Position numbers and translations under genes: made by a program | The notes under the pieces: generated by a model | The model's database searches: none | Seen by the model: only the letters and a program-made list of their open reading frames with translations | Told to the model about the DNA's origin: nothing | Assembly (NCBI GenBank): GCA_025594325.1 | Contig: JANHCV010000003.1 | Location: forward strand, 1,116,001-1,180,000 | Direction of reading: 5' to 3' | DNA: 64,000 nt | Source of the DNA: Blastocladiella emersonii ATCC 22665 | Taxonomy: Eukaryota; Fungi; Blastocladiomycota | Shown: positions 13,748 through 64,000 of the stretch, piece after piece | How positions within the stretch are numbered: the stretch's first letter is position 1 | How the letters are laid out: every line of letters begins with the position of its first letter

Positions 13748-13808
13748 AAGTGATGATTTTGGACTATTTTGATTGATAAACGATGTGATATTGCTACCTC
13801 CTCCCGCC

Positions 13809-14444: not shown

Positions 14445-14524
14445 GGTCCAAAATTTGTTCGTTGCGAGAGCGAGAACCGCCGACGACGCGCCCCCACTCT
14501 CAAATCTCAGGTCATCTATTTACA

Positions 14525-25632: not shown

Positions 25633-25692
25633 GGCTGCGAGGTGAGGGCGACGGAGAAGGTGTCTTGGGAGGAGAGCGGGGTGCGCCGCGTG

Positions 25693-25699
25693 CTTTATA
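25693..25699 (-). promoter_or_regulatory. TATA-like box upstream of ADE17
   Basis: TATAAAG on the minus strand about 60 nt upstream of the ATG, in otherwise GC-rich DNA. Confidence 0.45.
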
Positions 25700-34645: not shown

Positions 34646-35784
34646 ATAGACTCTTTTGTACAGCATGCCGGTTAAGAGTGGATGCGCGTCCTCACCCGTG
34701 TTATGGTTCAGCATGGCAACCGGCCAGCGATGCCCCGATGAAAGCGAGTGCTCCCAAGCGCGGCTGCGTCCCTGCTGAACCCCGCCTCTGGTTGGGCGAC
34801 GCGGGATGGCGCGCCGTGTTGTGCTCGTGGACCATGAGGAGGCGGCGCTGGTCGAAACGATCATAGGAACCCTTAACATCCACGCTTCCAAGGCTTGTTA
34901 GCCACGTCTTGGGAGTACTATTAGACAAAGCTGGGACATTTTCATCGCGCATACTCTGTTCGCGGAGCTGTTTTGCTACTTTGGCCTGCCCGATCCACTT
35001 CTCGTGCGTGCGTGCGTGCGAGCCTGGAACTGTGCTCTCCCCCGCATCCATCGCAAGCAACAGCGCGGTGTGCCCTCGTCGTGGTACCGACCGTCGCGCT
35101 CACGAAGCCGGCGCCTGTTCGGTTCGCACCGAGGCGACATTGGTGGACGACTTGCCCATCGTCACTCAGGCCTCGTTTTCTGAGGTGTGGAGCGGAGTAG
35201 TCATGAGCTCCGTTACGCGCGCTCCAGCCGCCGCTGAGCTCGGCGAGCCCACGTATCGCTCTTTCCCGTCCCGTCCCGCCTATCTAGTCCACGCTGTACA
35301 AAACGGACATGTCTCGCAGACAAGCGGCTCTCTCGTCGTACGTCGATCGCTTCGCTGAAGAGCGAAGCTGCGAACCGCGGTGTCGCAGACGTGCAACAGA
35401 CGAGGCGACCCACGGCGAACACGGTGCGGAAGACTCTGGGTCTACCCGTTGATGAGTGCGTCGTCATCGATCTGGGCGAGGGCCGGGGACCGGCCGTTCA
35501 TGTGGTGTACACGATCGTGCGGCGAGCGACGAGCGACAGGCGCGCCGTCCGTGACGTCATGAATGGACGCGTCTCGAAATCACGTTTCTGTCTCCGCCCG
35601 GGCGCGAGACGTGTCGCGTCGCGTCGGCTTTCGCGAGGACCACTCGTGTAACCTCTCTCACTTGCTGCTCCCTTCCAACAGCCTCAGCGCCTCGACGGAT
35701 TCGAGCCATTCTTTCGCCCGAGCTGAGTTCCGATTAGACGCTAGCCGATAACGGCGAGTCCTCAGCCTTCATTTTGAGGCAGCG

Positions 35785-37778
35785 ATGGTTTCCTCCCGGT
35801 AGTCAACCATCATGGGCCAGACCAGCAGCAGCTTCCTGGGCAGTGTATCCAGTACCATCAACGACTCTGCTGCTGCTTCCAACGACGCCACAGTCTCCTC
35901 GCCGCAACCACGGACAAGACGCTGAAATCGTGGCACACGCTGCGCCTGCTCGACCCCGAGACGCCGCTGTGGTCCGAGGTCGAGGCGGGGCTGCGCCAGT
36001 GGAACTGTCTTGCATTCCACCAGATCGCAGTCGCAGACGCAGTCGAAAAGTCGATCCGCCCGTGGCCTGCGGCGGGTGGATCGGCGGTCGAGCAGGCCGT
36101 GCTGCGGGCTGTCGTCGCAGTGATGCAGGACACGCCAGTCGTTGACGACGACATGGCCGTGAGCGGACCTGCCGCGTCGACACCGCCGCGGAAGCGACAC
36201 TACTCGCTGCTGCTCGTCCTCAACCAGTGCCTCGCCGTCGCGTACGACGCGGCCGTGTTCGACGAGTATTTCGGGCTGCTCGAGACCTCGGACGACCCGC
36301 TGACCGTCGTCCGGGTCCTCGACGGGCTCGTCGTGGCGTCCCCGCCGCCGCAGCTGACGCCGCTCCTGCGCGACCACCTCGCGACGATCCTCGCCTACTC
36401 TGCCGCGGCGCACCGCGCGCTCCACGTGTGCACGACGGCGTGCCTTGACTCGATTGCGTGACAGCTTAACTGCAGGTCGCCCGAGGCGCTTCTCGACCGC
36501 GCCGCGCAGTACCTCATCAATACGCTGCACGCGCAGATCCGGTACATCAAACTCAAACCGCAGCTCCCGCACATGATGCGCGCCGTCGTCCGTGGCGCCG
36601 GGCCCGCGGCCGCCGTCTGGTTCGAGGACGCGGTCCTCGCTGCGCTCAGCCGGCATCTCGCGCAGCCTGAGCTGTGGAAGGAGTCTACCGAGGTCATCCT
36701 CGAGCTCGTGCACACGGCGACGGTGCCGTTCGGTCCCTCGCTCGCCAAGCCGCCACTGGCAGCGGTCGGGGAGTCGAAACCGGTGCTCCCCGCGCGGTTC
36801 GCCGCCGTGTCGCCGTGGCTCAAGCGGACGAACGGCGACGTGCTCGTCAACTTGGCGCTGGACGCCGAGAACCTCGCCAAGGCGGCGTCGCCGTCGGACG
36901 CGTTCCCCGACGGGACCGACGCGCAGGCCATGGAGACGGACCCGAACGAGGGCGCGGACCTCGACGCCGACGGCAAGTCCTCGCTCCCGCACGCCGCGCA
37001 GGTCCTGCTGCACATCCTGCACCACGCGCGCAACCTGATCGCGGCGGCGCCGCCGCGCGTCCGCGTCGAGCTCCTCCGCCTCGCCACGGCGACGCTCGAC
37101 AAGCTGTCCGGGTACGACCGGTACACCAACTCCGGGATCTACCGGATCCTGCAGGTCGTCTCCCTCGCGCCGCCGGCCGCTGGCGCTGGTGCTGGTGCTG
37201 GTGCTGCAGCGCACGCGTACCTCGTCGACGCGACGCTCGACTTTCTCGCGGCCGCCGCGCGCCAGTCGCCCGACTACGGCGCGGATACTGTGGTCCAGCA
37301 CCACGGCGGCGAGGTCGTCGCCATCGCCGCGGGGACCGGCAAGTCGTCGCTGCGCGCTGCCCGCGCCCTGTGTGCTATCATCGCGGCGGCGACGCGGCCC
37401 GACGAGTCCCGCGTGTCGACGGCCGGGACCCCGATCCAGCCGCGGCTCGCGCACCAGGCCGTCATGGCGCTCGCGCCCGTGTTCCTTGCGCCGTGGCAGG
37501 CGGACGGCGAGGACCTACGGCCAGCGGCCCGTGACGCGATCCAGGCGCTCGTCGCGGCACCGCGCACGTGCAACGCGGCGTGGATGGCGCTTGCTGTCCT
37601 GCGAAAGGCGTTAGTAGTCGAGGCGCACGTCACGCCGCCCACCGACGCGGTGGTCGCGGCGCTCGTGGCCGCGATCCCGGACGCGGTCGCTGACGAGGTC
37701 CGTGGCCGGGTTCGCCGGCTCGACACGGACCAGGTTGCGATACTTGATGGCATACTGGCCGAGGCGGGCCAGTCTTGA
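35785..37778 (+). CDS. HEAT/ARM-repeat protein, TTI1-like (copy 1)
   Basis: Likely introns 35799-35893 and about 36428-36475. LLDRAAQYLINTLHAQIRYIKLKPQLPHMMRAVV and PVFLAPWQ...AARDAIQALV...AAWMAL resemble the TTI1 mid and C-terminal regions as recalled. Start uncertain. Confidence 0.5.
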
Positions 37779-37903
37779 GATGGGGTGGTCGAAATACATG
37801 TATACGGTCAACACGTGAAGAAATCATCGCGTCGGCGCGGTGGCGGTGGTTCGTTTGCCGCGGGCTCGCTGTCGGCAGTGGCACTCCCTACCACATCGCC
37901 GCC

Positions 37904-39240
37904 ATGGAGCACACATCAACTTCAATGAAACATGACTCTGCGCATTATGATCCAGCGGCCGATCCGGGCAAGACTTCCGCCAGCGGAGTCGGTAACCACG
38001 TTTCTCAACCGGGGGGCGTCCCGTTCGAGCTGCTCGCCGCCGTGGTGCAGCTCGCGGGACCACGCGAGTGCCTTGCCACCGCCACTCGCGAGATCCAGTT
38101 CGTCTATTCCGATTCGGAAGTCAAGCGCGTCTGGACCCGCAGGCGCTTGACCTCGCAGTTCCACCAAGTCCTTGATAAAGTAGACATCGCGTCGGGTAAG
38201 CTTCCACTGACCGACCTCGTCGGCTACTTGCAGTGCGTCGCACCAGGCAAACCGGGCTATTCCAGCCGCGACTTCTTCTATGTAGCGTCGGACACCTTTC
38301 TTCAGCTCTTACAGCCCACCCGGGGGGCCGCCAAATCGGATCCGAAGCGCTGCACTACGCTCATCAATCCTCCTGAGCGCATGAACAAGCCGGTGGGCCG
38401 CCACACGAAGCTTACGCCGTGTTTCGAATCGCCTGGCTTCTCGCTGCTCCAGCTGCTCCTTGCCGTCGTCGCGAGCGGAGACGCGACAGCGGCCCGCAAG
38501 CTGCTCGAGGACACGTTCGAGCGAGCGCCCGAGTTGCTTGACGTGAAGCGCGCATGCTGGCACTCGGTCTCCCACGCGCTGTAGCTGTCCCGGTTTTCTG
38601 GCGGCGCTCATTCATGGTACTGGGCGAGCCGCTTGTCAAGCTGTCCCGGCCGATGACCTTGCTTGACTATCTCGCGGTTCTCTCAATCCTCGCTTGGAAC
38701 CCTGGCGTCCTAGAGGCGATCAGCGACCTCGAACTGGCGATCGACGTGCAGCTGTTGTTCCACGTGCTTTCGGAGCAAATCGATCTCCCTCGCTGCCTCG
38801 GCGAACATTTTCCAAAGGGGATCATGGCGGCTACCAGCGTCTCGCGCATGCTCGATTGGATGTTCGCGTTCGCACCGATACTTGGCGACCAGCTCCTTGA
38901 GTCAGGGCTGCTCGACTCGCTTCGGTTGCCGCACATGAAAGAGGCTCTCCTGCACGCTCTCGCTTGCTATCCGATCAAGTTGATTGAACACAAGCCGCCT
39001 GCCGTTCGCGCGGAGCTCGTCGCGATGGCCTACCAAAACGGTTGCGCCGGTAACCTCGTCAGGGATCTCGCGGACAACGCGCTGCTTGACGCCGACACCG
39101 TCAACTGTCTCCTGATGTACGCACTGAAGAAAGACACCAATCACAACTTGTCTGAGCTCCAGAAGCACTTGGTCACGGCGAGGGGCGGAGGCACAGCCGA
39201 TCTGAGGCTTACTGGGATGAGGAATGACACTGCGGGATGA
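37904..39240 (+). CDS. Accessory ORF pair (37904-38584 and 38554-39240), either one frameshifted or spliced gene or two genes (copy 1)
   Basis: Two overlapping protein-like ORFs in different frames; F-box-like start VPFELLAAVVQLAG; Leu-rich helical second half; atypical codon usage. Confidence 0.45.
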
Positions 39241-39303
39241 TTGTGAACCTTCGCTCCCTGGCGCTTCGGCTAAACTGGAAATTTTATTGTCATCGTCCTG
39301 AAT

Positions 39304-40050
39304 GTGTCGATGCAGTCCGCGCAGCCCACGTACGGCTACCCGGCCAAGGAGTACCCAAGCATCACGCCAGCGACGGCGGCGGGCGCGGGCGCGGGCGCGG
39401 GCGGGTTGTCGTCAATCACGGCGCCCATCTCGCGCGCCACGTCGGGCCTGGCGAGTCTCGCGGCGCCGCTGACGGACACGGCGGCGTACTGGGGCCGGCT
39501 CGGCTACGACACGTTTACGCGTGTACTGGGACGCGCACGTGTTCTTTTTCGAGCGTGTCGCACTCGCATTCCCCCCAAGCAGCACACTCACCGCACACTC
39601 CCCCCGCTCTCCTACCGAACGCGTAGGTACCCGCCGCTGCGCGCGTTCACGTACGCGTTCGGTGCGCTGACGGCGATCCCGAACCTCATCTTCCTCACGT
39701 ACGCGGCCATCTCGTTCTGGATCGTGGCAACGATCGCGACGGTTGGCACGCTCGTGGTCGAGGGCGGGATCCTCGGGTTTGGCATGCTGTTCCTCGGGCC
39801 GATCCTGTTTTTCTCGTTTTGGGGCGCCCTGATCGCCGTCGGCCTGTCCACGGCCGCCTTCTACGGCCTGCGCGCCTCGTCCATCACGCTCAGCACGGCG
39901 CAGTCGGTCATGGGCGACTCGGGCATTGTCGGCGGCAGCGTCGGGCTCGCCAAGAACGCGCTCGCCACCACGGCCACCCTCATGGAGAAGGCCGAGGCTG
40001 TGGTCGTTGGCCACGAGGGCCTGCCCGTGCCCATCGCCGGCCGCGTCTAA
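39304..40050 (+). CDS. Promethin/LDAF1-like lipid-droplet membrane protein (copy 1)
   Basis: YPPLRAFTYAFGALTAIPNLIFL...VEGGILGFGMLFLGPILFFSF, a long hydrophobic hairpin pattern. Probable intron ending at TAG 39627 (donor uncertain; the ORF also reads through). Confidence 0.6.
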   Translation: MSMQSAQPTYGYPAKEYPSITPATAAGAGAGAGGLSSITAPISRATSGLASLAAPLTDTAAYWGRLGYDTFTRVLGRARVLFRACRTRIPPKQHTHRTLPPLSYRTRRYPPLRAFTYAFGALTAIPNLIFLTYAAISFWIVATIATVGTLVVEGGILGFGMLFLGPILFFSFWGALIAVGLSTAAFYGLRASSITLSTAQSVMGDSGIVGGSVGLAKNALATTATLMEKAEAVVVGHEGLPVPIAGRV

Positions 40051-40553
40051 GCGCGTCGTTGGTCGTCGGTCGTCGCGTTGGTTGTCGTGCCGTGTCGCGG
40101 GGCTGCTCGGTTCCTCACCATCATCTTGTACCATATCATCCACCATCCCGTACGCGCGCACCCAGAGTCGAGGGCGGGGAGTTTGTTTCGTCGTCGTCGT
40201 CGTCATGTGAGAATCGGAAAACGTGTTTGTTCTGCTCGCCCGTCTCTACTCAATCTCAAGGTGCTGTGGCCGTGCGAGACGCGCTCGACGTGCGCGGGCC
40301 GGACCGAAAGGCTCGCTCGCGCGCCGCACGAGTTGTGCGCGGCGACCGCGACCCACCACTGCACGGTGGGCGCGGACGTGGCAGCCGTGAACTGACTGAA
40401 CGGCGCGGCGCGTGAAGGACGCGGCACCTTTCCATTCGCCATCGCGTCGCGAAACAAGGAATGAACACAAAAATAGATCAAATTACACGCATGGTTGAGA
40501 GTTTGGTTACAATGGTAGGTATCACGAACTGAAAACAGAAAGAAAGGAAAGAC

Positions 40554-41555
40554 TCAAGAAACAATGGCCGCGGACCGCAGCACAACGACAGGCACCACTG
40601 AGGAGGCGCTTGGGAGGACCTTGACGCCGTGCTTGATCGGGCGCGACTTGGACTCGCACAAAGGCACAGAAGACACCATGACGGTACTGGATGCACCACC
40701 CAGGAGGCTGCCGATGCGAGTCTTGAACGACGACCACCGCGAGGGAGCCGCGGACTTGTCAAAGTTGTTGACCAGCGTCTGGTCCGAACCAAACTCCTCT
40801 GACACAGGTGCGAGGTTCGAGCCGTTGTTGTTGGCTGACTCGGGGAGCTGAACGACCGCCGCTGCCACCTCCATCTTGACCTTGGGGTTCGCCGCGGTTG
40901 GCGACGCACTGCCACGGTGGCCGGCATGGCGGCGAACCCAGCGCAGCACTTTGCCAGCGGCACTGCGCTTCTTCTTGGTCGGAATGGTGGTGGTGGTGTT
41001 GGCGGGCGCGGGAACCTGGATCACGGCCTGTTCGTTGCTCACAATGAACTCAAGAGCCGAGACAGCTGACGCGGACGGCTTGGACTCGGCCGTAGTAGCA
41101 ACAGCGATAGCGGCGGGGGCGGGCTCGAAGGTGGCACGCAGGGCCGATACATGCACTGCAGCGAGCGCCGCCTCGAGCTTGGCCGCCGTCGCTGCGCCAC
41201 TGAACGCGGCCGACTTGACGGTACCGCCGCCACGCTGCTGAACGCCGTCGTCGTGATGGACAAGGTGAAGCTTGTCCGAGGACCGCGAGCAGGGCGAACG
41301 AGTCGCGGGCGAGCCGAGAGGAGACGCAAACTGCTTGAACCGCGACTTGAGAGTGCCGACTGAGGAGGTCGGCGTCGAGTCGACGACGCACTCGTCGATG
41401 TCGCCGTCCTTGGTGTTCTCGGGCGCGTTGCGGCTGGTACCGGTCGTGGAAGCGACCACGATGCACAGCGACGGGCGAGCCGAGGACAGCGGAACCTTGG
41501 GCGACGACGAGGTCGAGGTCGAGGTCGAGGGAGCGAGGGCAAGCTGGGAAGACAT
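40554..41555 (-). CDS. Orphan Ser/Thr/Ala-rich protein (copy 1)
   Basis: Intronless ORF from MSSQLALAP; C/G-biased codons; CATAAAA box about 100 nt upstream; T-rich 3' flank. Confidence 0.6.
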   Translation of the reverse strand: MSSQLALAPSTSTSTSSSPKVPLSSARPSLCIVVASTTGTSRNAPENTKDGDIDECVVDSTPTSSVGTLKSRFKQFASPLGSPATRSPCSRSSDKLHLVHHDDGVQQRGGGTVKSAAFSGAATAAKLEAALAAVHVSALRATFEPAPAAIAVATTAESKPSASAVSALEFIVSNEQAVIQVPAPANTTTTIPTKKKRSAAGKVLRWVRRHAGHRGSASPTAANPKVKMEVAAAVVQLPESANNNGSNLAPVSEEFGSDQTLVNNFDKSAAPSRWSSFKTRIGSLLGGASSTVMVSSVPLCESKSRPIKHGVKVLPSASSVVPVVVLRSAAIVS

Positions 41556-42331
41556 GGTGTGCGACAAGGGGGTCTTGTGGGGAAACAATATCCTCTCTGA
41601 AAGTCCTGTTGGAAAGTGCAGAGCGAGAGCTGGAGGGGGTCGGCTGGCCGCGTTTTATGGGACGATCCGCCTCTGCATGCGACCTCCCGACTTTTCGCGC
41701 ATCGACGCGCTCATTGGTCGAGGATTCAAAGATGAATACATGCACTTCCTGGAGGAGCTCATGTGATCCGTGCTGGGTGGCGCAGCAGCGGTCAGCAAAG
41801 CCACCATCGCGGGCTGGCGCGAACGCGTCGCGTTTCAAGTCCTTGCCGCGAGCCGGGCTCTTGCGATAGCACGCGCGGGTCCAGCTGCGCATCGGGACAC
41901 GGGGACACCAACGAGGCATGGCAGCTCGAGGGCGGCGCAGTCATGTTGAAGAGCCACTCGCGACCACGGGCGCCGCCCATGATCGCGACGCGAACATTGA
42001 CTGAGTGGGCCTTAAAATTCGAAAGAACCATCGTCCATGGAGTCTGCTCTATTCATCTAGCGCAACTGCTAGAGTTGCCGGAACCGGGGAGCTGCCGCCG
42101 GGTGCGGGGGCAGCAGACACAGTGCGCATACGACTTCAAACTAGCTCGCCCTTCAATCATGGGAGAGGAGTTCTCAAGCGAGAGGTAGCAGAATTGTAGA
42201 TCAAGAGAGCAACGGTGGAGTTTAGGTAGACTATAGACAAGTTTATACAAAAACGCGGCGACATCTAGTTGTAGCGCAGGCGAGCGAACAAGCGAGTGTG
42301 AGTGCGACATGGGCGGCACGGCACCCCTAGC

Positions 42332-43126
42332 TTAGCAGCAGCCGTGGTTGATGGGCAGGATCGTCACGTCGCAGTCGTTGCTGCTGTTGTTGATGGGCAT
42401 GATGTGGAAGTCGCTGCTGCCACTGCCGGTGCTGCAGTCGCCTGAGGGACCCCAGGTGGCCGGGTTGCCGCCGACAAAGCCGTCGGCCGAGTGGTGGCCC
42501 TGGAACTGGGTCTGCGACTGCGACTGGAACGCGTCGCCGTGGCCGTTGGACCACTGGCCCTGCGACTGCGACTGCGACTGGTGCTGCGCGGCGTCGCCGT
42601 GGCCGTTGCCCCACTGGGTCTGCGACTGGGACTGCTGCTGGGCGCTGTTGCCGCCAAACTGGGTCTGCGACTGCGACTGGGCCTGGTCGACCGAGTGGTG
42701 GTTACCCCAGTTGCCCTGGAACTGGGACTGCGACTGCTGCTGCGCGGCGTCGCCGTGGTGGCCCCAGTTGCCCTGGAACTGCGACTGGGACTGCGACTGA
42801 GCAGCGTCGCCGCCCCACTGAGTCTGCGACTGCGACTGCGACTGCTGCTGGGCACCCGAGCCGTGGCCGAACTGGGTCTGCGTCTGCGACTGGAACTGGG
42901 CCTGGTCGACCGAGTGGTGGCCCTGGAACTGCGACTGCGACTGGGACTGCGACTGCACGGCGTCACCGCCAAACTGGGTCTGCGACTGCGACTGCTGCTG
43001 GGCGCCGTTACCGCCGAACTGGGTCTGCGACTGGGACTGCGACTGAGCGCCGTGGCCGCCAAACTGCATCTGCGACTGCGACTGGGTCTGGACGGCGGGG
43101 ACGTGGATGGGAGCGCAGAAGGTCAT
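42332..43126 (-). CDS. 264-aa Gln/Ser/Gly/His tandem-repeat protein (copy 1)
   Basis: Twelve QSQSQTQ(F/W)G-type repeats; extreme CAG/TCG codon bias; GCCAAG-ATG context; upstream TATA. Confidence 0.85.
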   Translation of the reverse strand: MTFCAPIHVPAVQTQSQSQMQFGGHGAQSQSQSQTQFGGNGAQQQSQSQTQFGGDAVQSQSQSQSQFQGHHSVDQAQFQSQTQTQFGHGSGAQQQSQSQSQTQWGGDAAQSQSQSQFQGNWGHHGDAAQQQSQSQFQGNWGNHHSVDQAQSQSQTQFGGNSAQQQSQSQTQWGNGHGDAAQHQSQSQSQGQWSNGHGDAFQSQSQTQFQGHHSADGFVGGNPATWGPSGDCSTGSGSSDFHIMPINNSSNDCDVTILPINHGCC

Positions 43127-47600: not shown

Positions 47601-47729
47601 GAGAGGAGAGCGAGCAGGAGGAGAGGAACGAGATGCGAAAGCTCGAGCTCTACACAAGAATTACGGGCGGGATGGCACGAGGATAACAAACGGGAGTCAG
47701 CAACACGATCATATTGTTGTTGCTGGTAC
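44661..47729 (-). pseudogene. Decayed tandem array of exon-intron cassettes (copy 1)
   Basis: Exact mirror of 51118-54186. Confidence 0.7.
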
Positions 47730-50843: not shown

Positions 50844-50986
50844 CCTGAGCGTCAGCGGCGGCGAGACGAGTCGGTGGTCGACGCTCCCGTCCCTTCACCA
50901 TCACCTCCTCTCATCCTGAGCGTCCGCGGCGGCGGGCTCTCATCCCTTCACCTCCTCTCATCCTGAGCGTCGGCGGCGGCGAGACG
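50844..50986 (+). repeat. Three-copy short direct repeat CCTGAGCGTCnGCGGCGGCG (mirror 47861-48003)
   Basis: Copies start at 50844, 50915 and 50962; the last two also share the upstream CACCTCCTCTCAT. Confidence 0.8.
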
Positions 50987-51117
50987 CATTGGTTGAGGCT
51001 CGCTCTCATCTCTCTCGTTCCTTTCCCTCGGCTGTCATGAGCGTCGGTGGCCGCGACCACGACTTGCCTCATCCTCATCATGCCCTTCCTCGAACGGCCA
51101 GGTCGCAACGCCTCCCC

Positions 51118-54100: not shown

Positions 54101-54186
54101 ACTTTGGGACTCGGTACGACCCATCCCCAACCCGCATCCCGAGTGCTACTCGCTGACTCTTGTTTGTTCACCTCTCAAACACACAG
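51118..54186 (+). pseudogene. Decayed tandem array of homologous exon-intron cassettes (copy 2)
   Basis: Eight related 58-64-nt GT...TAG segments (51409-51467, 51952-52010, 52312-52375, 52780-52838, 53059-53116, 53303-53362, 53558-53616, 53875-53933) plus two unrelated canonical introns (51118-51197, 54114-54186). The shared coding frame is broken by stops and frameshifts. Confidence 0.7.
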
Positions 54187-55615
54187 ACCAGCGTCGCCTT
54201 CTCGCTGCTACTACACCCAAGAACATTCACCCCGCGCTCGCTCCGCGTCTCGACCATGGCCATCTACAACATCGACACGCTGCTCCTCTCGTCCAACATT
54301 GCCGGTCTGGTACACGTCGACCCACTCTCGCACTTCACTCGCGCGTGCTGATCGCCGCCCCCGTACAGCTCCTGCATCGCAATCCACCCCTTCCTCCTCC
54401 ATCTCCTTTGTGTTTCCCTCGCATCCCGTCCGGGAAGCCAACCCATTGTATCAGCCTACCTGCGGCGTGCAAAACGGGTACATCCGAGGTGTGCCGCTCT
54501 CGCAGTCGGCTGCTGCCCCCTCACCTCTTGCGCGCATCCATCGTCCAAATCTGGTCGCTTACCCAATCGCTCCCTTGTCCGCTGTCTCTCCGACTCGACA
54601 TCGTCTCCTGGATCGCGCCGCGAAGAGTCCTCGACGCATGTGCCGCATCACCCGTCCCGCGCAGTGACCTCGCCAAGCGAGTAGCCGGACCGCTGGTGCG
54701 TCACCGCTGCGAGTATGGGACTCTCTCTGCTGGTCGACTAGGGTCGGTGTCAACCTCGAGGGAGCAGGCTGGATGGAGCTGGGTTGTGGGTGGTTTCGCC
54801 GCGCTTGGGGGTGAGTGGGGCAGCGACCTTGGGTGCATCCCAAGTAGTGCGTCGTGGCGGCGGTGTCGCAGTTCCCATTAATCGGGACCCGTTCCTCGTT
54901 CTGACCTCATCCACCTCAACTTGACCCTCTCGCGGCGCAGCGTGGGACGCGCGCGACAGTCGGCGAGCCGGTCCTTGGCCGTCCCGAGCGAGGCGACGGC
55001 GGGGGCGGGCTCAAGCGGGCGCGACGACGCGTGCTACCGAGCCGCACCGTCAGTTGGCCGCGATCTGTGCGATTAAACTACATCTCGTTTGTTGTCTCTA
55101 TCACTCCTGTCTCGTGCCTCGACCGTGCAAGAACACGGAGAAGTGGAGACGCGTCGAACAAACACGTGAGCGGAGCGAGACAGCGCTGATCGCTTGGTCT
55201 CGCCTTCGCGAACGCCGCCACCGCTCCCTTGCGCCCTTGCTCGCCCACTACAATGAAGCGATGCACTCCATGCAATGGAATCGAATGGATCATCGCCGTG
55301 GACTGCGCCACTGTCCTGAGGGCAACGCCGACCGAGTTGAAACGGCGTTGGCCGGCTCACCCTCGGCTGTTCGCGGCGGGTCGAGGCTACGGGAACTTGT
55401 GAACTTGGGCGAGCAGTGAGCCGCTGCGCATCCGCAGCGAGCCCACACGAGAGAGGTGAAGCTGCCGACCGCGAACCGCTGCGCGCCTTGCGGTGAGCGG
55501 TCGAGGTCTGCGGGGCGCCGCTGCTGCTGAAACGCGACGGCCGCGGCGACCATTTTTAGCCACGCGTCACCACTTCTACTTGCTCTTGAGTCGCAGTCGT
55601 CGGTGAGCGAGAGAG

Positions 55616-55622
55616 TATAAGA
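55616..55622 (+). promoter_or_regulatory. TATA box of the Q/S-repeat gene (mirror at 43225-43231, minus strand)
   Basis: TATAAGA 105 nt upstream of the ATG, followed by a C-rich leader. Confidence 0.55.
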
Positions 55623-55720
55623 CCATGGCGCGCCCCGGCCTCTCTTCCAGCTGATCAGCACACTCGGCAATCCCAACCTCCACCACCACACCGCCTCCCA
55701 CTCCCTCAACCACCGCCAAG

Positions 55721-56515
55721 ATGACCTTCTGCGCTCCCATCCACGTCCCCGCCGTCCAGACCCAGTCGCAGTCGCAGATGCAGTTTGGCGGCCACGGCGC
55801 TCAGTCGCAGTCCCAGTCGCAGACCCAGTTCGGCGGTAACGGCGCCCAGCAGCAGTCGCAGTCGCAGACCCAGTTTGGCGGTGACGCCGTGCAGTCGCAG
55901 TCCCAGTCGCAGTCGCAGTTCCAGGGCCACCACTCGGTCGACCAGGCCCAGTTCCAGTCGCAGACGCAGACCCAGTTCGGCCACGGCTCGGGTGCCCAGC
56001 AGCAGTCGCAGTCGCAGTCGCAGACTCAGTGGGGCGGCGACGCTGCTCAGTCGCAGTCCCAGTCGCAGTTCCAGGGCAACTGGGGCCACCACGGCGACGC
56101 CGCGCAGCAGCAGTCGCAGTCCCAGTTCCAGGGCAACTGGGGTAACCACCACTCGGTCGACCAGGCCCAGTCGCAGTCGCAGACCCAGTTTGGCGGCAAC
56201 AGCGCCCAGCAGCAGTCCCAGTCGCAGACCCAGTGGGGCAACGGCCACGGCGACGCCGCGCAGCACCAGTCGCAGTCGCAGTCGCAGGGCCAGTGGTCCA
56301 ACGGCCACGGCGACGCGTTCCAGTCGCAGTCGCAGACCCAGTTCCAGGGCCACCACTCGGCCGACGGCTTTGTCGGCGGCAACCCGGCCACCTGGGGTCC
56401 CTCAGGCGACTGCAGCACCGGCAGTGGCAGCAGCGACTTCCACATCATGCCCATCAACAACAGCAGCAACGACTGCGACGTGACGATCCTGCCCATCAAC
56501 CACGGCTGCTGCTAA
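55721..56515 (+). CDS. 264-aa Gln/Ser/Gly/His tandem-repeat protein (copy 2)
   Basis: Exact mirror of 42332-43126. Confidence 0.85.
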   Translation: MTFCAPIHVPAVQTQSQSQMQFGGHGAQSQSQSQTQFGGNGAQQQSQSQTQFGGDAVQSQSQSQSQFQGHHSVDQAQFQSQTQTQFGHGSGAQQQSQSQSQTQWGGDAAQSQSQSQFQGNWGHHGDAAQQQSQSQFQGNWGNHHSVDQAQSQSQTQFGGNSAQQQSQSQTQWGNGHGDAAQHQSQSQSQGQWSNGHGDAFQSQSQTQFQGHHSADGFVGGNPATWGPSGDCSTGSGSSDFHIMPINNSSNDCDVTILPINHGCC

Positions 56516-57291
56516 GCTAGGGGTGCCGTGCCGCCCATGTCGCACTCACACTCGCTTGTTCGCTCGCCTGCGCTACAACTAGATGTCGCCGCGTTTTTGT
56601 ATAAACTTGTCTATAGTCTACCTAAACTCCACCGTTGCTCTCTTGATCTACAATTCTGCTACCTCTCGCTTGAGAACTCCTCTCCCATGATTGAAGGGCG
56701 AGCTAGTTTGAAGTCGTATGCGCACTGTGTCTGCTGCCCCCGCACCCGGCGGCAGCTCCCCGGTTCCGGCAACTCTAGCAGTTGCGCTAGATGAATAGAG
56801 CAGACTCCATGGACGATGGTTCTTTCGAATTTTAAGGCCCACTCAGTCAATGTTCGCGTCGCGATCATGGGCGGCGCCCGTGGTCGCGAGTGGCTCTTCA
56901 ACATGACTGCGCCGCCCTCGAGCTGCCATGCCTCGTTGGTGTCCCCGTGTCCCGATGCGCAGCTGGACCCGCGCGTGCTATCGCAAGAGCCCGGCTCGCG
57001 GCAAGGACTTGAAACGCGACGCGTTCGCGCCAGCCCGCGATGGTGGCTTTGCTGACCGCTGCTGCGCCACCCAGCACGGATCACATGAGCTCCTCCAGGA
57101 AGTGCATGTATTCATCTTTGAATCCTCGACCAATGAGCGCGTCGATGCGCGAAAAGTCGGGAGGTCGCATGCAGAGGCGGATCGTCCCATAAAACGCGGC
57201 CAGCCGACCCCCTCCAGCTCTCGCTCTGCACTTTCCAACAGGACTTTCAGAGAGGATATTGTTTCCCCACAAGACCCCCTTGTCGCACACC

Positions 57292-58293
57292 ATGTCTTCC
57301 CAGCTTGCCCTCGCTCCCTCGACCTCGACCTCGACCTCGTCGTCGCCCAAGGTTCCGCTGTCCTCGGCTCGCCCGTCGCTGTGCATCGTGGTCGCTTCCA
57401 CGACCGGTACCAGCCGCAACGCGCCCGAGAACACCAAGGACGGCGACATCGACGAGTGCGTCGTCGACTCGACGCCGACCTCCTCAGTCGGCACTCTCAA
57501 GTCGCGGTTCAAGCAGTTTGCGTCTCCTCTCGGCTCGCCCGCGACTCGTTCGCCCTGCTCGCGGTCCTCGGACAAGCTTCACCTTGTCCATCACGACGAC
57601 GGCGTTCAGCAGCGTGGCGGCGGTACCGTCAAGTCGGCCGCGTTCAGTGGCGCAGCGACGGCGGCCAAGCTCGAGGCGGCGCTCGCTGCAGTGCATGTAT
57701 CGGCCCTGCGTGCCACCTTCGAGCCCGCCCCCGCCGCTATCGCTGTTGCTACTACGGCCGAGTCCAAGCCGTCCGCGTCAGCTGTCTCGGCTCTTGAGTT
57801 CATTGTGAGCAACGAACAGGCCGTGATCCAGGTTCCCGCGCCCGCCAACACCACCACCACCATTCCGACCAAGAAGAAGCGCAGTGCCGCTGGCAAAGTG
57901 CTGCGCTGGGTTCGCCGCCATGCCGGCCACCGTGGCAGTGCGTCGCCAACCGCGGCGAACCCCAAGGTCAAGATGGAGGTGGCAGCGGCGGTCGTTCAGC
58001 TCCCCGAGTCAGCCAACAACAACGGCTCGAACCTCGCACCTGTGTCAGAGGAGTTTGGTTCGGACCAGACGCTGGTCAACAACTTTGACAAGTCCGCGGC
58101 TCCCTCGCGGTGGTCGTCGTTCAAGACTCGCATCGGCAGCCTCCTGGGTGGTGCATCCAGTACCGTCATGGTGTCTTCTGTGCCTTTGTGCGAGTCCAAG
58201 TCGCGCCCGATCAAGCACGGCGTCAAGGTCCTCCCAAGCGCCTCCTCAGTGGTGCCTGTCGTTGTGCTGCGGTCCGCGGCCATTGTTTCTTGA
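57292..58293 (+). CDS. Orphan Ser/Thr/Ala-rich protein (copy 2)
   Basis: Exact mirror of 40554-41555. Confidence 0.6.
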   Translation: MSSQLALAPSTSTSTSSSPKVPLSSARPSLCIVVASTTGTSRNAPENTKDGDIDECVVDSTPTSSVGTLKSRFKQFASPLGSPATRSPCSRSSDKLHLVHHDDGVQQRGGGTVKSAAFSGAATAAKLEAALAAVHVSALRATFEPAPAAIAVATTAESKPSASAVSALEFIVSNEQAVIQVPAPANTTTTIPTKKKRSAAGKVLRWVRRHAGHRGSASPTAANPKVKMEVAAAVVQLPESANNNGSNLAPVSEEFGSDQTLVNNFDKSAAPSRWSSFKTRIGSLLGGASSTVMVSSVPLCESKSRPIKHGVKVLPSASSVVPVVVLRSAAIVS

Positions 58294-58796
58294 GTCTTTC
58301 CTTTCTTTCTGTTTTCAGTTCGTGATACCTACCATTGTAACCAAACTCTCAACCATGCGTGTAATTTGATCTATTTTTGTGTTCATTCCTTGTTTCGCGA
58401 CGCGATGGCGAATGGAAAGGTGCCGCGTCCTTCACGCGCCGCGCCGTTCAGTCAGTTCACGGCTGCCACGTCCGCGCCCACCGTGCAGTGGTGGGTCGCG
58501 GTCGCCGCGCACAACTCGTGCGGCGCGCGAGCGAGCCTTTCGGTCCGGCCCGCGCACGTCGAGCGCGTCTCGCACGGCCACAGCACCTTGAGATTGAGTA
58601 GAGACGGGCGAGCAGAACAAACACGTTTTCCGATTCTCACATGACGACGACGACGACGAAACAAACTCCCCGCCCTCGACTCTGGGTGCGCGCGTACGGG
58701 ATGGTGGATGATATGGTACAAGATGATGGTGAGGAACCGAGCAGCCCCGCGACACGGCACGACAACCAACGCGACGACCGACGACCAACGACGCGC

Positions 58797-59543
58797 TTAG
58801 ACGCGGCCGGCGATGGGCACGGGCAGGCCCTCGTGGCCAACGACCACAGCCTCGGCCTTCTCCATGAGGGTGGCCGTGGTGGCGAGCGCGTTCTTGGCGA
58901 GCCCGACGCTGCCGCCGACAATGCCCGAGTCGCCCATGACCGACTGCGCCGTGCTGAGCGTGATGGACGAGGCGCGCAGGCCGTAGAAGGCGGCCGTGGA
59001 CAGGCCGACGGCGATCAGGGCGCCCCAAAACGAGAAAAACAGGATCGGCCCGAGGAACAGCATGCCAAACCCGAGGATCCCGCCCTCGACCACGAGCGTG
59101 CCAACCGTCGCGATCGTTGCCACGATCCAGAACGAGATGGCCGCGTACGTGAGGAAGATGAGGTTCGGGATCGCCGTCAGCGCACCGAACGCGTACGTGA
59201 ACGCGCGCAGCGGCGGGTACCTACGCGTTCGGTAGGAGAGCGGGGGGAGTGTGCGGTGAGTGTGCTGCTTGGGGGGAATGCGAGTGCGACACGCTCGAAA
59301 AAGAACACGTGCGCGTCCCAGTACACGCGTAAACGTGTCGTAGCCGAGCCGGCCCCAGTACGCCGCCGTGTCCGTCAGCGGCGCCGCGAGACTCGCCAGG
59401 CCCGACGTGGCGCGCGAGATGGGCGCCGTGATTGACGACAACCCGCCCGCGCCCGCGCCCGCGCCCGCCGCCGTCGCTGGCGTGATGCTTGGGTACTCCT
59501 TGGCCGGGTAGCCGTACGTGGGCTGCGCGGACTGCATCGACAC
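58797..59543 (-). CDS. Promethin/LDAF1-like protein (copy 2)
   Basis: Exact mirror of 39304-40050. Confidence 0.6.
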   Translation of the reverse strand: MSMQSAQPTYGYPAKEYPSITPATAAGAGAGAGGLSSITAPISRATSGLASLAAPLTDTAAYWGRLGYDTFTRVLGRARVLFRACRTRIPPKQHTHRTLPPLSYRTRRYPPLRAFTYAFGALTAIPNLIFLTYAAISFWIVATIATVGTLVVEGGILGFGMLFLGPILFFSFWGALIAVGLSTAAFYGLRASSITLSTAQSVMGDSGIVGGSVGLAKNALATTATLMEKAEAVVVGHEGLPVPIAGRV

Positions 59544-59606
59544 ATTCAGGACGATGACAATAAAATTTCCAGTTTAGCCGAAGCGCCAGGGAGCGAAGGT
59601 TCACAA

Positions 59607-60943
59607 TCATCCCGCAGTGTCATTCCTCATCCCAGTAAGCCTCAGATCGGCTGTGCCTCCGCCCCTCGCCGTGACCAAGTGCTTCTGGAGCTCAGACAAG
59701 TTGTGATTGGTGTCTTTCTTCAGTGCGTACATCAGGAGACAGTTGACGGTGTCGGCGTCAAGCAGCGCGTTGTCCGCGAGATCCCTGACGAGGTTACCGG
59801 CGCAACCGTTTTGGTAGGCCATCGCGACGAGCTCCGCGCGAACGGCAGGCGGCTTGTGTTCAATCAACTTGATCGGATAGCAAGCGAGAGCGTGCAGGAG
59901 AGCCTCTTTCATGTGCGGCAACCGAAGCGAGTCGAGCAGCCCTGACTCAAGGAGCTGGTCGCCAAGTATCGGTGCGAACGCGAACATCCAATCGAGCATG
60001 CGCGAGACGCTGGTAGCCGCCATGATCCCCTTTGGAAAATGTTCGCCGAGGCAGCGAGGGAGATCGATTTGCTCCGAAAGCACGTGGAACAACAGCTGCA
60101 CGTCGATCGCCAGTTCGAGGTCGCTGATCGCCTCTAGGACGCCAGGGTTCCAAGCGAGGATTGAGAGAACCGCGAGATAGTCAAGCAAGGTCATCGGCCG
60201 GGACAGCTTGACAAGCGGCTCGCCCAGTACCATGAATGAGCGCCGCCAGAAAACCGGGACAGCTACAGCGCGTGGGAGACCGAGTGCCAGCATGCGCGCT
60301 TCACGTCAAGCAACTCGGGCGCTCGCTCGAACGTGTCCTCGAGCAGCTTGCGGGCCGCTGTCGCGTCTCCGCTCGCGACGACGGCAAGGAGCAGCTGGAG
60401 CAGCGAGAAGCCAGGCGATTCGAAACACGGCGTAAGCTTCGTGTGGCGGCCCACCGGCTTGTTCATGCGCTCAGGAGGATTGATGAGCGTAGTGCAGCGC
60501 TTCGGATCCGATTTGGCGGCCCCCCGGGTGGGCTGTAAGAGCTGAAGAAAGGTGTCCGACGCTACATAGAAGAAGTCGCGGCTGGAATAGCCCGGTTTGC
60601 CTGGTGCGACGCACTGCAAGTAGCCGACGAGGTCGGTCAGTGGAAGCTTACCCGACGCGATGTCTACTTTATCAAGGACTTGGTGGAACTGCGAGGTCAA
60701 GCGCCTGCGGGTCCAGACGCGCTTGACTTCCGAATCGGAATAGACGAACTGGATCTCGCGAGTGGCGGTGGCAAGGCACTCGCGTGGTCCCGCGAGCTGC
60801 ACCACGGCGGCGAGCAGCTCGAACGGGACGCCCCCCGGTTGAGAAACGTGGTTACCGACTCCGCTGGCGGAAGTCTTGCCCGGATCGGCCGCTGGATCAT
60901 AATGCGCAGAGTCATGTTTCATTGAAGTTGATGTGTGCTCCAT
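59607..60943 (-). CDS. Accessory ORF pair (copy 2)
   Basis: Exact mirror of 37904-39240. Confidence 0.45.
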
Positions 60944-61068
60944 GGCGGCGATGTGGTAGGGAGTGCCACTGCCGACAGCGAGCCCGCGGCAAACGAACCA
61001 CCGCCACCGCGCCGACGCGATGATTTCTTCACGTGTTGACCGTATACATGTATTTCGACCACCCCATC

Positions 61069-63062
61069 TCAAGACTGGCCCGCCTCGGCCAGTATGCCAT
61101 CAAGTATCGCAACCTGGTCCGTGTCGAGCCGGCGAACCCGGCCACGGACCTCGTCAGCGACCGCGTCCGGGATCGCGGCCACGAGCGCCGCGACCACCGC
61201 GTCGGTGGGCGGCGTGACGTGCGCCTCGACTACTAACGCCTTTCGCAGGACAGCAAGCGCCATCCACGCCGCGTTGCACGTGCGCGGTGCCGCGACGAGC
61301 GCCTGGATCGCGTCACGGGCCGCTGGCCGTAGGTCCTCGCCGTCCGCCTGCCACGGCGCAAGGAACACGGGCGCGAGCGCCATGACGGCCTGGTGCGCGA
61401 GCCGCGGCTGGATCGGGGTCCCGGCCGTCGACACGCGGGACTCGTCGGGCCGCGTCGCCGCCGCGATGATAGCACACAGGGCGCGGGCAGCGCGCAGCGA
61501 CGACTTGCCGGTCCCCGCGGCGATGGCGACGACCTCGCCGCCGTGGTGCTGGACCACAGTATCCGCGCCGTAGTCGGGCGACTGGCGCGCGGCGGCCGCG
61601 AGAAAGTCGAGCGTCGCGTCGACGAGGTACGCGTGCGCTGCAGCACCAGCACCAGCACCAGCGCCAGCGGCCGGCGGCGCGAGGGAGACGACCTGCAGGA
61701 TCCGGTAGATCCCGGAGTTGGTGTACCGGTCGTACCCGGACAGCTTGTCGAGCGTCGCCGTGGCGAGGCGGAGGAGCTCGACGCGGACGCGCGGCGGCGC
61801 CGCCGCGATCAGGTTGCGCGCGTGGTGCAGGATGTGCAGCAGGACCTGCGCGGCGTGCGGGAGCGAGGACTTGCCGTCGGCGTCGAGGTCCGCGCCCTCG
61901 TTCGGGTCCGTCTCCATGGCCTGCGCGTCGGTCCCGTCGGGGAACGCGTCCGACGGCGACGCCGCCTTGGCGAGGTTCTCGGCGTCCAGCGCCAAGTTGA
62001 CGAGCACGTCGCCGTTCGTCCGCTTGAGCCACGGCGACACGGCGGCGAACCGCGCGGGGAGCACCGGTTTCGACTCCCCGACCGCTGCCAGTGGCGGCTT
62101 GGCGAGCGAGGGACCGAACGGCACCGTCGCCGTGTGCACGAGCTCGAGGATGACCTCGGTAGACTCCTTCCACAGCTCAGGCTGCGCGAGATGCCGGCTG
62201 AGCGCAGCGAGGACCGCGTCCTCGAACCAGACGGCGGCCGCGGGCCCGGCGCCACGGACGACGGCGCGCATCATGTGCGGGAGCTGCGGTTTGAGTTTGA
62301 TGTACCGGATCTGCGCGTGCAGCGTATTGATGAGGTACTGCGCGGCGCGGTCGAGAAGCGCCTCGGGCGACCTGCAGTTAAGCTGTCACGCAATCGAGTC
62401 AAGGCACGCCGTCGTGCACACGTGGAGCGCGCGGTGCGCCGCGGCAGAGTAGGCGAGGATCGTCGCGAGGTGGTCGCGCAGGAGCGGCGTCAGCTGCGGC
62501 GGCGGGGACGCCACGACGAGCCCGTCGAGGACCCGGACGACGGTCAGCGGGTCGTCCGAGGTCTCGAGCAGCCCGAAATACTCGTCGAACACGGCCGCGT
62601 CGTACGCGACGGCGAGGCACTGGTTGAGGACGAGCAGCAGCGAGTAGTGTCGCTTCCGCGGCGGTGTCGACGCGGCAGGTCCGCTCACGGCCATGTCGTC
62701 GTCAACGACTGGCGTGTCCTGCATCACTGCGACGACAGCCCGCAGCACGGCCTGCTCGACCGCCGATCCACCCGCCGCAGGCCACGGGCGGATCGACTTT
62801 TCGACTGCGTCTGCGACTGCGATCTGGTGGAATGCAAGACAGTTCCACTGGCGCAGCCCCGCCTCGACCTCGGACCACAGCGGCGTCTCGGGGTCGAGCA
62901 GGCGCAGCGTGTGCCACGATTTCAGCGTCTTGTCCGTGGTTGCGGCGAGGAGACTGTGGCGTCGTTGGAAGCAGCAGCAGAGTCGTTGATGGTACTGGAT
63001 ACACTGCCCAGGAAGCTGCTGCTGGTCTGGCCCATGATGGTTGACTACCGGGAGGAAACCAT
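61069..63062 (-). CDS. HEAT/ARM-repeat protein, TTI1-like (copy 2)
   Basis: Exact mirror of 35785-37778. Confidence 0.5.
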
Positions 63063-64000
63063 CGCTGCCTCAAAATGAAGGCTGAGGACTCGCCGTTATC
63101 GGCTAGCGTCTAATCGGAACTCAGCTCGGGCGAAAGAATGGCTCGAATCCGTCGAGGCGCTGAGGCTGTTGGAAGGGAGCAGCAAGTGAGAGAGGTTACA
63201 CGAGTGGTCCTCGCGAAAGCCGACGCGACGCGACACGTCTCGCGCCCGGGCGGAGACAGAAACGTGATTTCGAGACGCGTCCATTCATGACGTCACGGAC
63301 GGCGCGCCTGTCGCTCGTCGCTCGCCGCACGATCGTGTACACCACATGAACGGCCGGTCCCCGGCCCTCGCCCAGATCGATGACGACGCACTCATCAACG
63401 GGTAGACCCAGAGTCTTCCGCACCGTGTTCGCCGTGGGTCGCCTCGTCTGTTGCACGTCTGCGACACCGCGGTTCGCAGCTTCGCTCTTCAGCGAAGCGA
63501 TCGACGTACGACGAGAGAGCCGCTTGTCTGCGAGACATGTCCGTTTTGTACAGCGTGGACTAGATAGGCGGGACGGGACGGGAAAGAGCGATACGTGGGC
63601 TCGCCGAGCTCAGCGGCGGCTGGAGCGCGCGTAACGGAGCTCATGACTACTCCGCTCCACACCTCAGAAAACGAGGCCTGAGTGACGATGGGCAAGTCGT
63701 CCACCAATGTCGCCTCGGTGCGAACCGAACAGGCGCCGGCTTCGTGAGCGCGACGGTCGGTACCACGACGAGGGCACACCGCGCTGTTGCTTGCGATGGA
63801 TGCGGGGGAGAGCACAGTTCCAGGCTCGCACGCACGCACGCACGAGAAGTGGATCGGGCAGGCCAAAGTAGCAAAACAGCTCCGCGAACAGAGTATGCGC
63901 GATGAAAATGTCCCAGCTTTGTCTAATAGTACTCCCAAGACGTGGCTAACAAGCCTTGGAAGCGTGGATGTTAAGGGTTCCTATGATCGTTTCGACCAGC

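What the first reader, a model, noticed from the sequence alone, without database searches (positions are those of the whole stretch)
34847..64000. Apparently perfect inverted repeat of at least 13.8 kb per arm around a 1.56-kb unique spacer
Seen: one constant mirror sum (98847) holds across both arms, so there are no indels. No translated difference appears in any mirrored ORF, even in pseudogenic and intergenic DNA. Five gene loci are duplicated. Known: large palindromes arise by fold-back or template switching (breakage-fusion-bridge, ODIRA) and stay identical only if very recent or homogenised by arm-to-arm gene conversion; long-read and MDA fold-back chimeras give the same picture. Inference: either a real, conversion-maintained palindrome or an assembly artefact. 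A 1.56-kb unique loop is compatible with both.
Basis: partly seen in the sequence, partly recalled or inferred. Interest (0 to 1): 0.85.

Follow-up and report, generated by a model that had tools for sequence, protein, structure and literature searches.

The report
Real 29.5-kb palindrome in Blastocladiella
The water fungus Blastocladiella emersonii really carries a 29.5-kb mirror-image duplication in the middle of a chromosome-scale contig: two 14-kb arms that differ at one dinucleotide, around a 1.56-kb unique middle. It is a familiar kind of structure, one of many in this genome, and is not an assembly error.

Summary
The arms are 34666-48643 and 50204-64181 (13,978 nt each). They have no indels and are identical except for one dinucleotide 35 nt from the outer edge. 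The spacer is 1,560 nt and unique.

The window is B. emersonii ATCC 22665 contig JANHCV010000003.1, and the palindrome sits mid-contig (1.15-1.18 Mb of 2.64 Mb).

It is not a fold-back artefact. In the k-mer contigs of three public runs of the strain, the spacer contigs stop exactly 30 nt (k-1) inside each arm. In the two deep runs the arm contigs carry about twice the spacer depth.

Both outer edges are sharp. There is no target-site duplication, no useful microhomology and no decayed homology beyond the edges.

Each arm carries a C-terminal-only TTI1-like gene, a promethin-like gene, a Q/S-rich gene, a doubtful 333-aa ORF, and 5.5 kb of apparently non-coding intron-bearing cassettes.

Best reading: a genuine inverted segmental duplication. 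It is either very young or kept identical by arm-to-arm gene conversion; I cannot tell which.

This scan has already found and followed up several such palindromes on other contigs of this genome. This is therefore a new member of a known kind. The genome paper does not mention them. The centromere, switch and hairpin-RNA readings remain untested.

The parts
34666..48643 (.). Left arm of the palindrome (13,978 nt); record JANHCV010000003.1 1,150,666-1,164,643
   Evidence: Its outer edge lies 20 nt after the stop codon (34645) of the WD40/WRAP73-like gene.
48644..50203 (.). Unique spacer, 1,560 nt, GC 60.5%, with no coding signal
   Evidence: Unique in 66.5 kb. No high-GC3 ORF, Pfam hit or Rfam hit. 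Read contigs 48614-48973 and 50047-50233 reach exactly 30 nt into each arm. GC skew is +0.09, the same sign as the left inner arm.
50204..64000 (.). Right arm; it continues 181 nt past the window end, to 64181 in window numbering
   Evidence: A Vps26 gene starts 264 nt beyond the outer edge, followed by RPL3.
34701..34702 (.). The only arm-to-arm difference: TT here against GG at the mirror place 64145-64146, 35 nt from the outer edge
35812..38584 (+). TTI1-like gene, C-terminal part only (mirror copy 60263-63035, minus strand); annotated H9P43_003238/003244
   Evidence: Pfam TTI1. It aligns only to residues 533-1049 of the 1,106-aa Allomyces javanicus protein and 669-1195 of the 1,250-aa B. 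britannica protein. The in-frame stop at 36459 lies in a 48-nt GT..AG intron.
39237..40050 (+). Promethin (LDAF1)-like gene (mirror copy 58797-59610, minus strand)
   Evidence: Pfam PF16015; GC3 0.86
40554..41555 (-). Annotated 333-aa ORF of doubtful reality (mirror copy 57292-58293, plus strand)
   Evidence: Called in the public annotation. No Pfam hit, no atlas relative, and not among the high-GC3 ORFs.
42332..43126 (-). Q/S-rich repeat protein gene, 264 aa (mirror copy 55721-56515, plus strand)
   Evidence: GC3 0.92. The exact product is encoded at exactly two places, both on this contig. It contains internal 45-60-nt repeats.
44661..47729 (-). Array of about 7 degenerate cassettes, each with a conserved 58-64-nt GTACGT..TTCAC..GTGTAG intron, read outward from the centre (mirror copy 51118-54186, plus strand)
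   Evidence: No Pfam, atlas or Rfam match. Paralogues exist elsewhere in the genome.

Best explanation
This is a genuine chromosomal palindrome, an inverted segmental duplication of 13,978 nt placed head-to-head around 1,560 nt of single-copy DNA. It lies in the interior of a 2.64-Mb contig of Blastocladiella emersonii ATCC 22665. Shown: the structure, its exact edges, its presence in the reads, and the roughly 2:1 arm-to-spacer depth. Inferred: it arose by one inverted-copy event that kept both flanks, either a replication template switch or end-joining of an inverted copy into a break next to the original. It did not arise by transposition, ODIRA or a classical fold-back/dicentric cycle. The arms are identical either because the event is very recent or because intrachromosomal (arm-to-arm) gene conversion keeps erasing differences. 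The single surviving difference, 35 nt from the outer edge, fits either a conversion edge effect or error-prone synthesis at the breakpoint. The structure is probably passive: it doubles the dose of three genes, and recombination between the arms could flip the spacer. Nothing indicates a dedicated function.
For: Perfect mirror symmetry without indels. Sharp outer edges, with unrelated genes outside: WRAP73-like on the left, Vps26-RPL3 on the right, an adjacency conserved in Catenaria. Mid-contig position. Read evidence: in X1, X2 and X3 the spacer contig starts at 48614, which is 30 nt (k-1) before the left junction. In X1 and X2 a contig ends at 50233, 30 nt past the right junction; for X3 only the depth bins show cover across that junction. 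Spacer contigs have depth 237-255 in X2 and 62-69 in X3. Arm contigs have 494-582 and 146-168. No joints were reported, and no loose ends at the two junctions. A copy-specific dinucleotide sits 35 nt from each unique flank, which an artefactual doubling of one copy would not produce. There is no TSD and at most 2 nt of complementarity at the inner junction. Earlier follow-ups of this scan report several more near-perfect palindromes on other contigs.
Against: All four runs come from one sample, probably the one assembled, so they test the assembler and not the strain. No single-copy baseline depth was obtained. The absolute copy number (2 arms + 1 spacer) therefore rests on the ratio. The low-depth run X1 gives a ratio of only 1.0-2.0. 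Nothing here separates 'young' from 'conversion-maintained'. Paralogues of the inner arm exist elsewhere and blur the depths.
Confidence: 0.85

Rival explanations
1. Assembly artefact: a fold-back chimeric long read or a graph mis-traversal doubled a single-copy 14-kb segment.
For: The arms (13.98 kb) are longer than the mean HiFi read (10.5 kb), so few reads span an arm. The assembly was purged and polished. Perfect identity is what an artefact would give.
Against: Both junctions are present in k-mer contigs built from raw reads of two runs (X1, X2). In X3 the left one is, and the depth bins cover the right one. These contigs sit at full spacer depth. The arms sit at about twice that depth in X2 and X3. 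The two copies differ by a dinucleotide next to their different flanks. With an arm at twice the spacer depth, the only linear path through such a graph is flank-arm-spacer-arm'-flank.
Confidence: 0.04
2. Inverted-repeat centromere: the 1.56-kb core and the 5.5-kb gene-free inner arms form a CENP-A core with flanking repeats, as in S. pombe, Candida tropicalis or Komagataella.
For: A 12.6-kb stretch without annotated genes or coding signal lies at the centre. It has a unique core between perfect inverted repeats. It sits near the middle of the contig (0.44 of its length). GC is lower than in the left 30 kb.
Against: The outer arms carry ordinary genes. Earlier notes list a dozen or so palindromes in this genome, against at least 6 chromosomes inferred in the genome paper. 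At least one more lies on this same contig, so they are not one per chromosome. The GC drop starts 4.6 kb before the palindrome and is modest (63% against 71%). No retroelements or satellites are present. No CENP-A or Hi-C data exist.
Confidence: 0.05
3. Functional device: a flip-flop invertible spacer acting as a switch, or a hairpin-RNA/siRNA source from read-through transcription across the centre.
For: Identical 14-kb arms would allow inversion of the spacer by recombination. The cassette arrays carry splice-like signals.
Against: The cassette introns point outward from the centre on both arms, so transcription would diverge and not read through. The spacer has no gene or promoter-gene pair that inversion would rewire. 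No RNA run holding the spacer was listed (a listing gap, not absence). No recombinase gene lies nearby.
Confidence: 0.05

Closest known systems
Large palindromes of mammalian X/Y (and willow) sex chromosomes, kept over 99% identical by arm-to-arm gene conversion (PMC8327919, PMC8600007, PMC7023750)
   Same: Arms over 10 kb, essentially identical, around a short unique spacer. They carry duplicated protein-coding genes and sit inside a chromosome.
   Different: This one is in a fungus with no known sex chromosome. Gene conversion is not demonstrated here. There are no data on tissue- or stage-specific expression. No orthologous palindrome in another species is available to show age.
Fold-back (inverted duplication) rearrangements after double-strand breaks in Mre11/Sae2-deficient yeast (PMC10622511), and fold-back CNVs in Candida albicans (PMC7371428)
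   Same: Head-to-head inverted duplication with a short single-copy loop at the centre.
   Different: Those start from a short natural inverted repeat at the loop base and pass through a hairpin-capped and then dicentric chromosome. They lose the distal arm or capture a telomere. Here both flanks are kept, the duplication stops after 14 kb, and only 2 nt of complementarity bound the loop.
Other B. emersonii palindromes already followed up by this scan (s1-076256, s1-273125, s1-076262, s1-076272, s1-283516)
   Same: Same genome, same architecture: 6.8-27.8-kb arms that are identical or nearly so, a unique middle, and ordinary genes in the arms.
   Different: This one has one of the shortest spacers and a long gene-free inner arm. 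According to an unchecked note, it also has a neighbour 164 kb away with a spacer of exactly the same length.

Membership tests
Large near-identical chromosomal palindrome | Two inverted arms over 8-10 kb with over 99% identity | tested here: met
   13,978-nt arms with one dinucleotide difference
Large near-identical chromosomal palindrome | Unique spacer between the arms, with both junctions physically present in the DNA | tested here: met
   The 1,560-nt spacer is unique in 66.5 kb. Junction contigs are present at spacer depth: both in X1 and X2, the left one in X3.
Large near-identical chromosomal palindrome | Arms present at twice the copy number of the spacer and flanks | tested here: inconclusive
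   Arm to spacer is about 2:1 in X2 and X3 and 1-2:1 in low-depth X1. Flank baseline was not measured.
Conversion-maintained palindrome | Arm identity higher than the age of the duplication allows (orthologous palindrome in a relative, or polymorphism data) | not testable with these tools
   Only one strain or sample is in the read index. Relatives share too little synteny. The single difference lying at the arm edge is suggestive only.
Fold-back priming inverted duplication | Short pre-existing inverted repeat at the base of the loop | tested here: not met
   Beyond the arms, only 2 of the next 3 nt are complementary.
Fold-back priming inverted duplication | Loss of the distal chromosome part, or telomere capture, after a dicentric stage | tested here: not met
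   Mid-contig position. The right flank Vps26-RPL3 is intact and syntenic with Catenaria.
ODIRA amplification | Inverted triplication (direct-inverted-direct) bounded by short inverted repeats | tested here: not met
   Two copies only in the assembly. The exact Q/S protein is encoded at just two places.
Inverted-repeat centromere | Unique core flanked by inverted repeats, gene-free | tested here: inconclusive
   The core and inner 5.5 kb of each arm lack genes, but the outer 8.5 kb of each arm carries genes.
Inverted-repeat centromere | CENP-A occupancy; one per chromosome | not testable with these tools
   No ChIP or Hi-C data. Notes report many palindromes, including another on this contig.
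Transposon with long terminal inverted repeats (foldback element) | Target-site duplication, transposase or multiple dispersed copies | tested here: not met
   No TSD. No transposase domain. Arm depth fits two copies.
Assembly fold-back artefact | One junction supported only by rare chimeric reads; arms at spacer depth | tested here: not met
   junction contigs at full spacer depth; arms at about twice that depth in X2 and X3.

The most novel reading that the evidence does not exclude
B. emersonii maintains a whole population of large, letter-perfect palindromes through unusually efficient intrachromosomal gene conversion. On this reading, this palindrome and its neighbour 164 kb upstream on the same contig are sister products of one complex rearrangement that split the essential TTI1 gene. 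An unchecked note gives that neighbour a spacer of exactly 1,560 nt as well, and other notes place a TTI1 start codon there, while only the C-terminal half of TTI1 lies here.
Probability: 0.12. Interest if true: 0.6.

Novelty: new member of a known kind. Interest (0 to 1): 0.38.

Why it matters
Large, nearly perfect palindromes are best known from animal and plant sex chromosomes, where gene conversion between the arms preserves genes. A haploid-looking, early-diverging fungus with a dozen or so of them would be a simple system for two questions: how such structures form, and whether arm-to-arm conversion alone keeps them identical. The 2022 genome paper does not mention them (the words palindrome and inverted never occur). 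There is also a practical point. Identical arms were annotated differently (a 790-aa fusion on one arm, 205-aa and 620-aa proteins on the other). Gene counts and short-read mapping in these regions are therefore unreliable.

Tried and rejected
- **Depth baseline:** Read laying allows one call, so neither the flank baseline depth nor the outer junctions could be laid.
- **RNA support:** no RNA run holding the spacer was listed.
- **Ancestral gene order from relatives:**
  - The Vps26 neighbourhoods in Catenaria and B. britannica share only Vps26-RPL3.
  - The TTI1 neighbourhoods share only a nearby AICARFT gene with A. javanicus.
  - This is too little to say which arm is the original.
- **Full-length TTI1 in B. 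emersonii:** two word-based searches returned only Allomyces proteins or the query itself.
- **The second palindrome 124 kb upstream:** it could not be reached.
- **A wasted look-up:** one search failed because of my off-by-one slip in the coordinates.
- **Identity of the central cassettes:** Pfam on long ORFs and on single exons, the protein atlas and Rfam all gave nothing.
- **Ideas considered and dropped:**
  - A tubulin-like origin of the cassette peptides. This was a resemblance recalled from memory, with no Pfam support.
  - A nonsense mutation in TTI1. The stop lies in a plausible 48-nt intron.
  - Decayed outer arms. There is no homology beyond the edges.
Full report
**1. Observation**

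The first mismatch is at 48644/50203. The repeat finder reports one inverted pair of 13,800 nt at 100% complementarity with 1,554 nt between. That count includes 3 extra positions, of which 2 pair.

The window ends inside the right arm. I fetched the surrounding contig through the exact product of the Q/S-rich gene and compared the two arms.
- The identical run is 13,941 nt.
- One dinucleotide then differs: 34701-34702 TT against 64145-64146 GG.
- 35 further identical nt follow, and homology then stops.
- The arms are therefore 34666-48643 and 50204-64181, 13,978 nt each, around a 1,560-nt spacer.
- Outside the edges, in-register identity is 27%, the random level, and no local similarity is found.

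**2. Source**

Pfam shows eukaryotic housekeeping genes: eIF2B-epsilon, NDUFS1, PLAA, TTI1 and promethin. The contig is JANHCV010000003.1 of GCA_025594325.1, 2,642,354 bp. The flanking Vps26 protein is named Blastocladiella emersonii ATCC 22665 by NCBI. The window is record 1,116,001-1,180,000. The palindrome lies at 1,150,666-1,180,181, 44% of the way along the contig, so it is not at a contig end.

The genome paper (PMC9730499) describes these methods:
- PacBio HiFi reads with a mean length of 10.5 kb;
- the La Jolla Assembler;
- purge_dups;
- Pilon polishing with GAIIx reads;
- mean coverage of about 191x.

The paper never uses the words palindrome, inverted or centromere.

**3. Real or artefact**

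Four public runs of one sample hold the centre. I laid their Logan contigs (k = 31, built from raw reads without reference to the published assembly) on 46700-52200.
- In X1, X2 and X3 a spacer contig begins at 48614, 30 nt (k-1) before the left junction.
- In X1 and X2 a contig ends at 50233, 30 nt after the right junction. For X3 the depth bins show cover across that junction.
- This is where a de Bruijn graph must branch if one arm sequence leads into both ends of a single spacer.
- In X2 the spacer contigs have depth 237-255 and the arm contigs 494-582.
- In X3 the figures are 62-69 and 146-168.
- In low-depth X1 the ratio is 1.0-2.0.
- No joints were reported, and no loose ends at the two junctions.

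With the arm at twice the spacer depth, and both spacer ends entering the arm at full spacer depth, the only linear path is flank-arm-spacer-arm'-flank. In addition, each arm carries its own dinucleotide 35 nt from its own unique flank. Doubling one copy would not create that.

Caveats:
- The runs are one sample, probably the one assembled.
- I have no flank baseline, because only one read-laying run is allowed.
- If X2 (dated 2022) is the HiFi run, which is my inference from the year, the spacer is about 1.3 times and the arms 2.6-3.0 times the paper's mean coverage. That fits 1 and 2 copies better than 0.5 and 1, but not cleanly.

I put the artefact reading at about 4%.

**4. Content**

From the outer edge inward, each arm holds:
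- about 1.1 kb without coding signal;
- a TTI1-like gene (35812-38584);
- a promethin-like gene (39237-40050);
- an annotated 333-aa ORF with no support from GC3, Pfam or the atlas;
- a Q/S-rich 264-aa gene (42332-43126);
- 5.5 kb with no annotated gene, no high-GC3 ORF and no Pfam, atlas or Rfam hit.

That last stretch holds about seven degenerate cassettes. Each carries a conserved 58-64-nt element with fungal intron signals (GTACGT..TTCAC..GTGTAG). The elements read outward from the centre on both arms. Most loose ends of read contigs there are absent from the 66.5 kb, so the cassettes have paralogues elsewhere in the genome.

The spacer is unique and has 60.5% GC. Its GC skew is +0.09, the same sign as the left inner arm. 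Because the spacer could flip, this does not show which arm is the original.

The TTI1-like gene covers only the C-terminal part of its orthologues: residues 533-1049 of 1,106 in Allomyces javanicus, and 669-1195 of 1,250 in B. britannica. Its in-frame stop lies in a 48-nt GT..AG intron, so it is truncated but not obviously dead.

The public annotation treats the identical arms differently: a 790-aa fusion on the left, and 205-aa plus 620-aa proteins on the right.

**5. Origin**

- There is no target-site duplication and no transposase, so this is not a transposon.
- There are two copies, not three, so this is not ODIRA.
- The classical fold-back pathway (PMC10622511) needs a short inverted repeat at the loop base. 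It ends with loss or replacement of the distal chromosome part.
- Here only 2 nt of complementarity bound the loop. Both flanks are kept. The right flank Vps26-RPL3 is syntenic with Catenaria.
- The left edge lies 20 nt after the WRAP73-like stop codon, so that gene's 3' end now lies in the arm. This weakly favours the left flank-arm joint as the ancestral one.
- I infer one event that copied 14 kb in inverted orientation next to the original without loss: a replication template switch, or end-joining of an inverted copy into a break.
- This step is inferred, not shown.

**6. Why the arms are identical**

- Zero differences in 13,941 nt bounds divergence at about 2 x 10^-4 per site (95%).
- The only difference lies in the outermost 0.25% of the arm. 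For one event placed at random, the chance of that is about 0.003.
- This fits gene conversion that seldom reaches the arm edge. It also fits error-prone synthesis at a breakpoint.
- Here there are no decayed outer arms, which some earlier follow-ups of other palindromes took as a sign of age.
- I cannot separate 'very young' from 'conversion-maintained' for this locus.

**7. Context from the scan (AI notes; those marked were followed up by other agents)**

The same genome holds several followed-up palindromes on other contigs:
- s1-076256: 25-kb arms with 3 differences;
- s1-273125: 12.3-kb identical arms;
- s1-076262: 6.8-kb identical arms;
- s1-076272: 9.5-kb arms;
- s1-283516: 27.8-kb arms.

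There are several more that were not followed up. This finding therefore repeats a pattern the scan already knows.

One unchecked note (s1-292521) places another palindrome 124 kb before this window on the same contig, with a spacer of exactly 1,560 nt. Other notes put a TTI1 start codon inside it. I could not fetch that DNA.

What I can say about that neighbour:
- The Q/S protein is encoded at only two places.
- No 95-99% variant contigs lie on the spacer.
- Its spacer is therefore identical, unrelated, or under 95% alike.

**8. Rival readings**

- The centromere reading has a gene-free, repeat-flanked core in its favour. Against it are the genes in the outer arms, too many palindromes for the number of chromosomes, and the absence of chromatin data.
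- A switch or hairpin-RNA reading lacks anything for inversion to rewire. The cassette introns point away from the centre. No RNA run was listed for the spacer, which is a listing gap and not proof of silence.

**9. Verdict**

This is a real palindrome of a known kind. It is a new member in a genome where such structures are common but unpublished. Interest is moderate to low for this locus alone, and higher for the genome-wide pattern.

Noticed in passing
L007:8953-10914 (contig 8) and L008:9101-11072 (contig 7): A dispersed repeat of about 2 kb, with the two copies 91.5% alike. It carries an internally deleted fragment of the arm's TTI1-like gene: window 35999-36372 (72-79% identity) joined directly to 36881-37099 (about 90%). 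It is annotated as small hypothetical proteins H9P43_006955 and H9P43_006331. It may be a gene-fragment-carrying mobile element.
   Followed up: partly
window 35812-38584 and 60263-63035: The duplicated TTI1-like gene lacks roughly the N-terminal 515-530 residues of its orthologues. No N-terminal homology lies in the 1.1 kb upstream or in either flank.
   Followed up: partly
about 124 kb before the window start, same contig (record ~991,716-1,011,300): An unchecked first-stage note reports a second palindrome whose spacer is exactly 1,560 nt, the same length as here. I could not fetch it.
   Followed up: no
window 44661-47729 / 51118-54186: Seven degenerate cassettes share a conserved 58-64-nt intron-like element that is better conserved than the 'exons' around it. 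Read contigs show more intact-looking paralogues elsewhere in the genome, and one loose end translates cleanly. No protein or RNA family matched.
   Followed up: partly
window 48114-48543: In run X4, whose loose ends carry loxP-like linker sequence, a contig is 98.6% identical to the innermost arm. It has spacer-like depth and diverges 100 nt before the junction. This is a further diverged copy of the inner arm somewhere in the genome.
   Followed up: no
window 49899-49902: Run X3 shows a 3-nt deletion plus a G>T change in the spacer on its only contig there, while X2 matches the assembly. This may be a difference between DNA preparations, or an error.
   Followed up: no
window 13077-17315 equivalents (L001 vs L002): The public annotation gives different gene models on the two identical arms: a 790-aa promethin-TTI1 fusion on one, and separate 205-aa and 620-aa proteins on the other.
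   Followed up: yes
window 23796-25694 and 35812-38584; L006: AICARFT/IMPCH lies about 10 kb from TTI1 both here and in Allomyces javanicus, but in a different relative order. The neighbourhood is old and has been rearranged.
   Followed up: partly
window ~30000: GC falls from about 71% to about 63% some 4.6 kb before the palindrome's left edge and stays lower through the arms, the spacer and the right flank.
   Followed up: no
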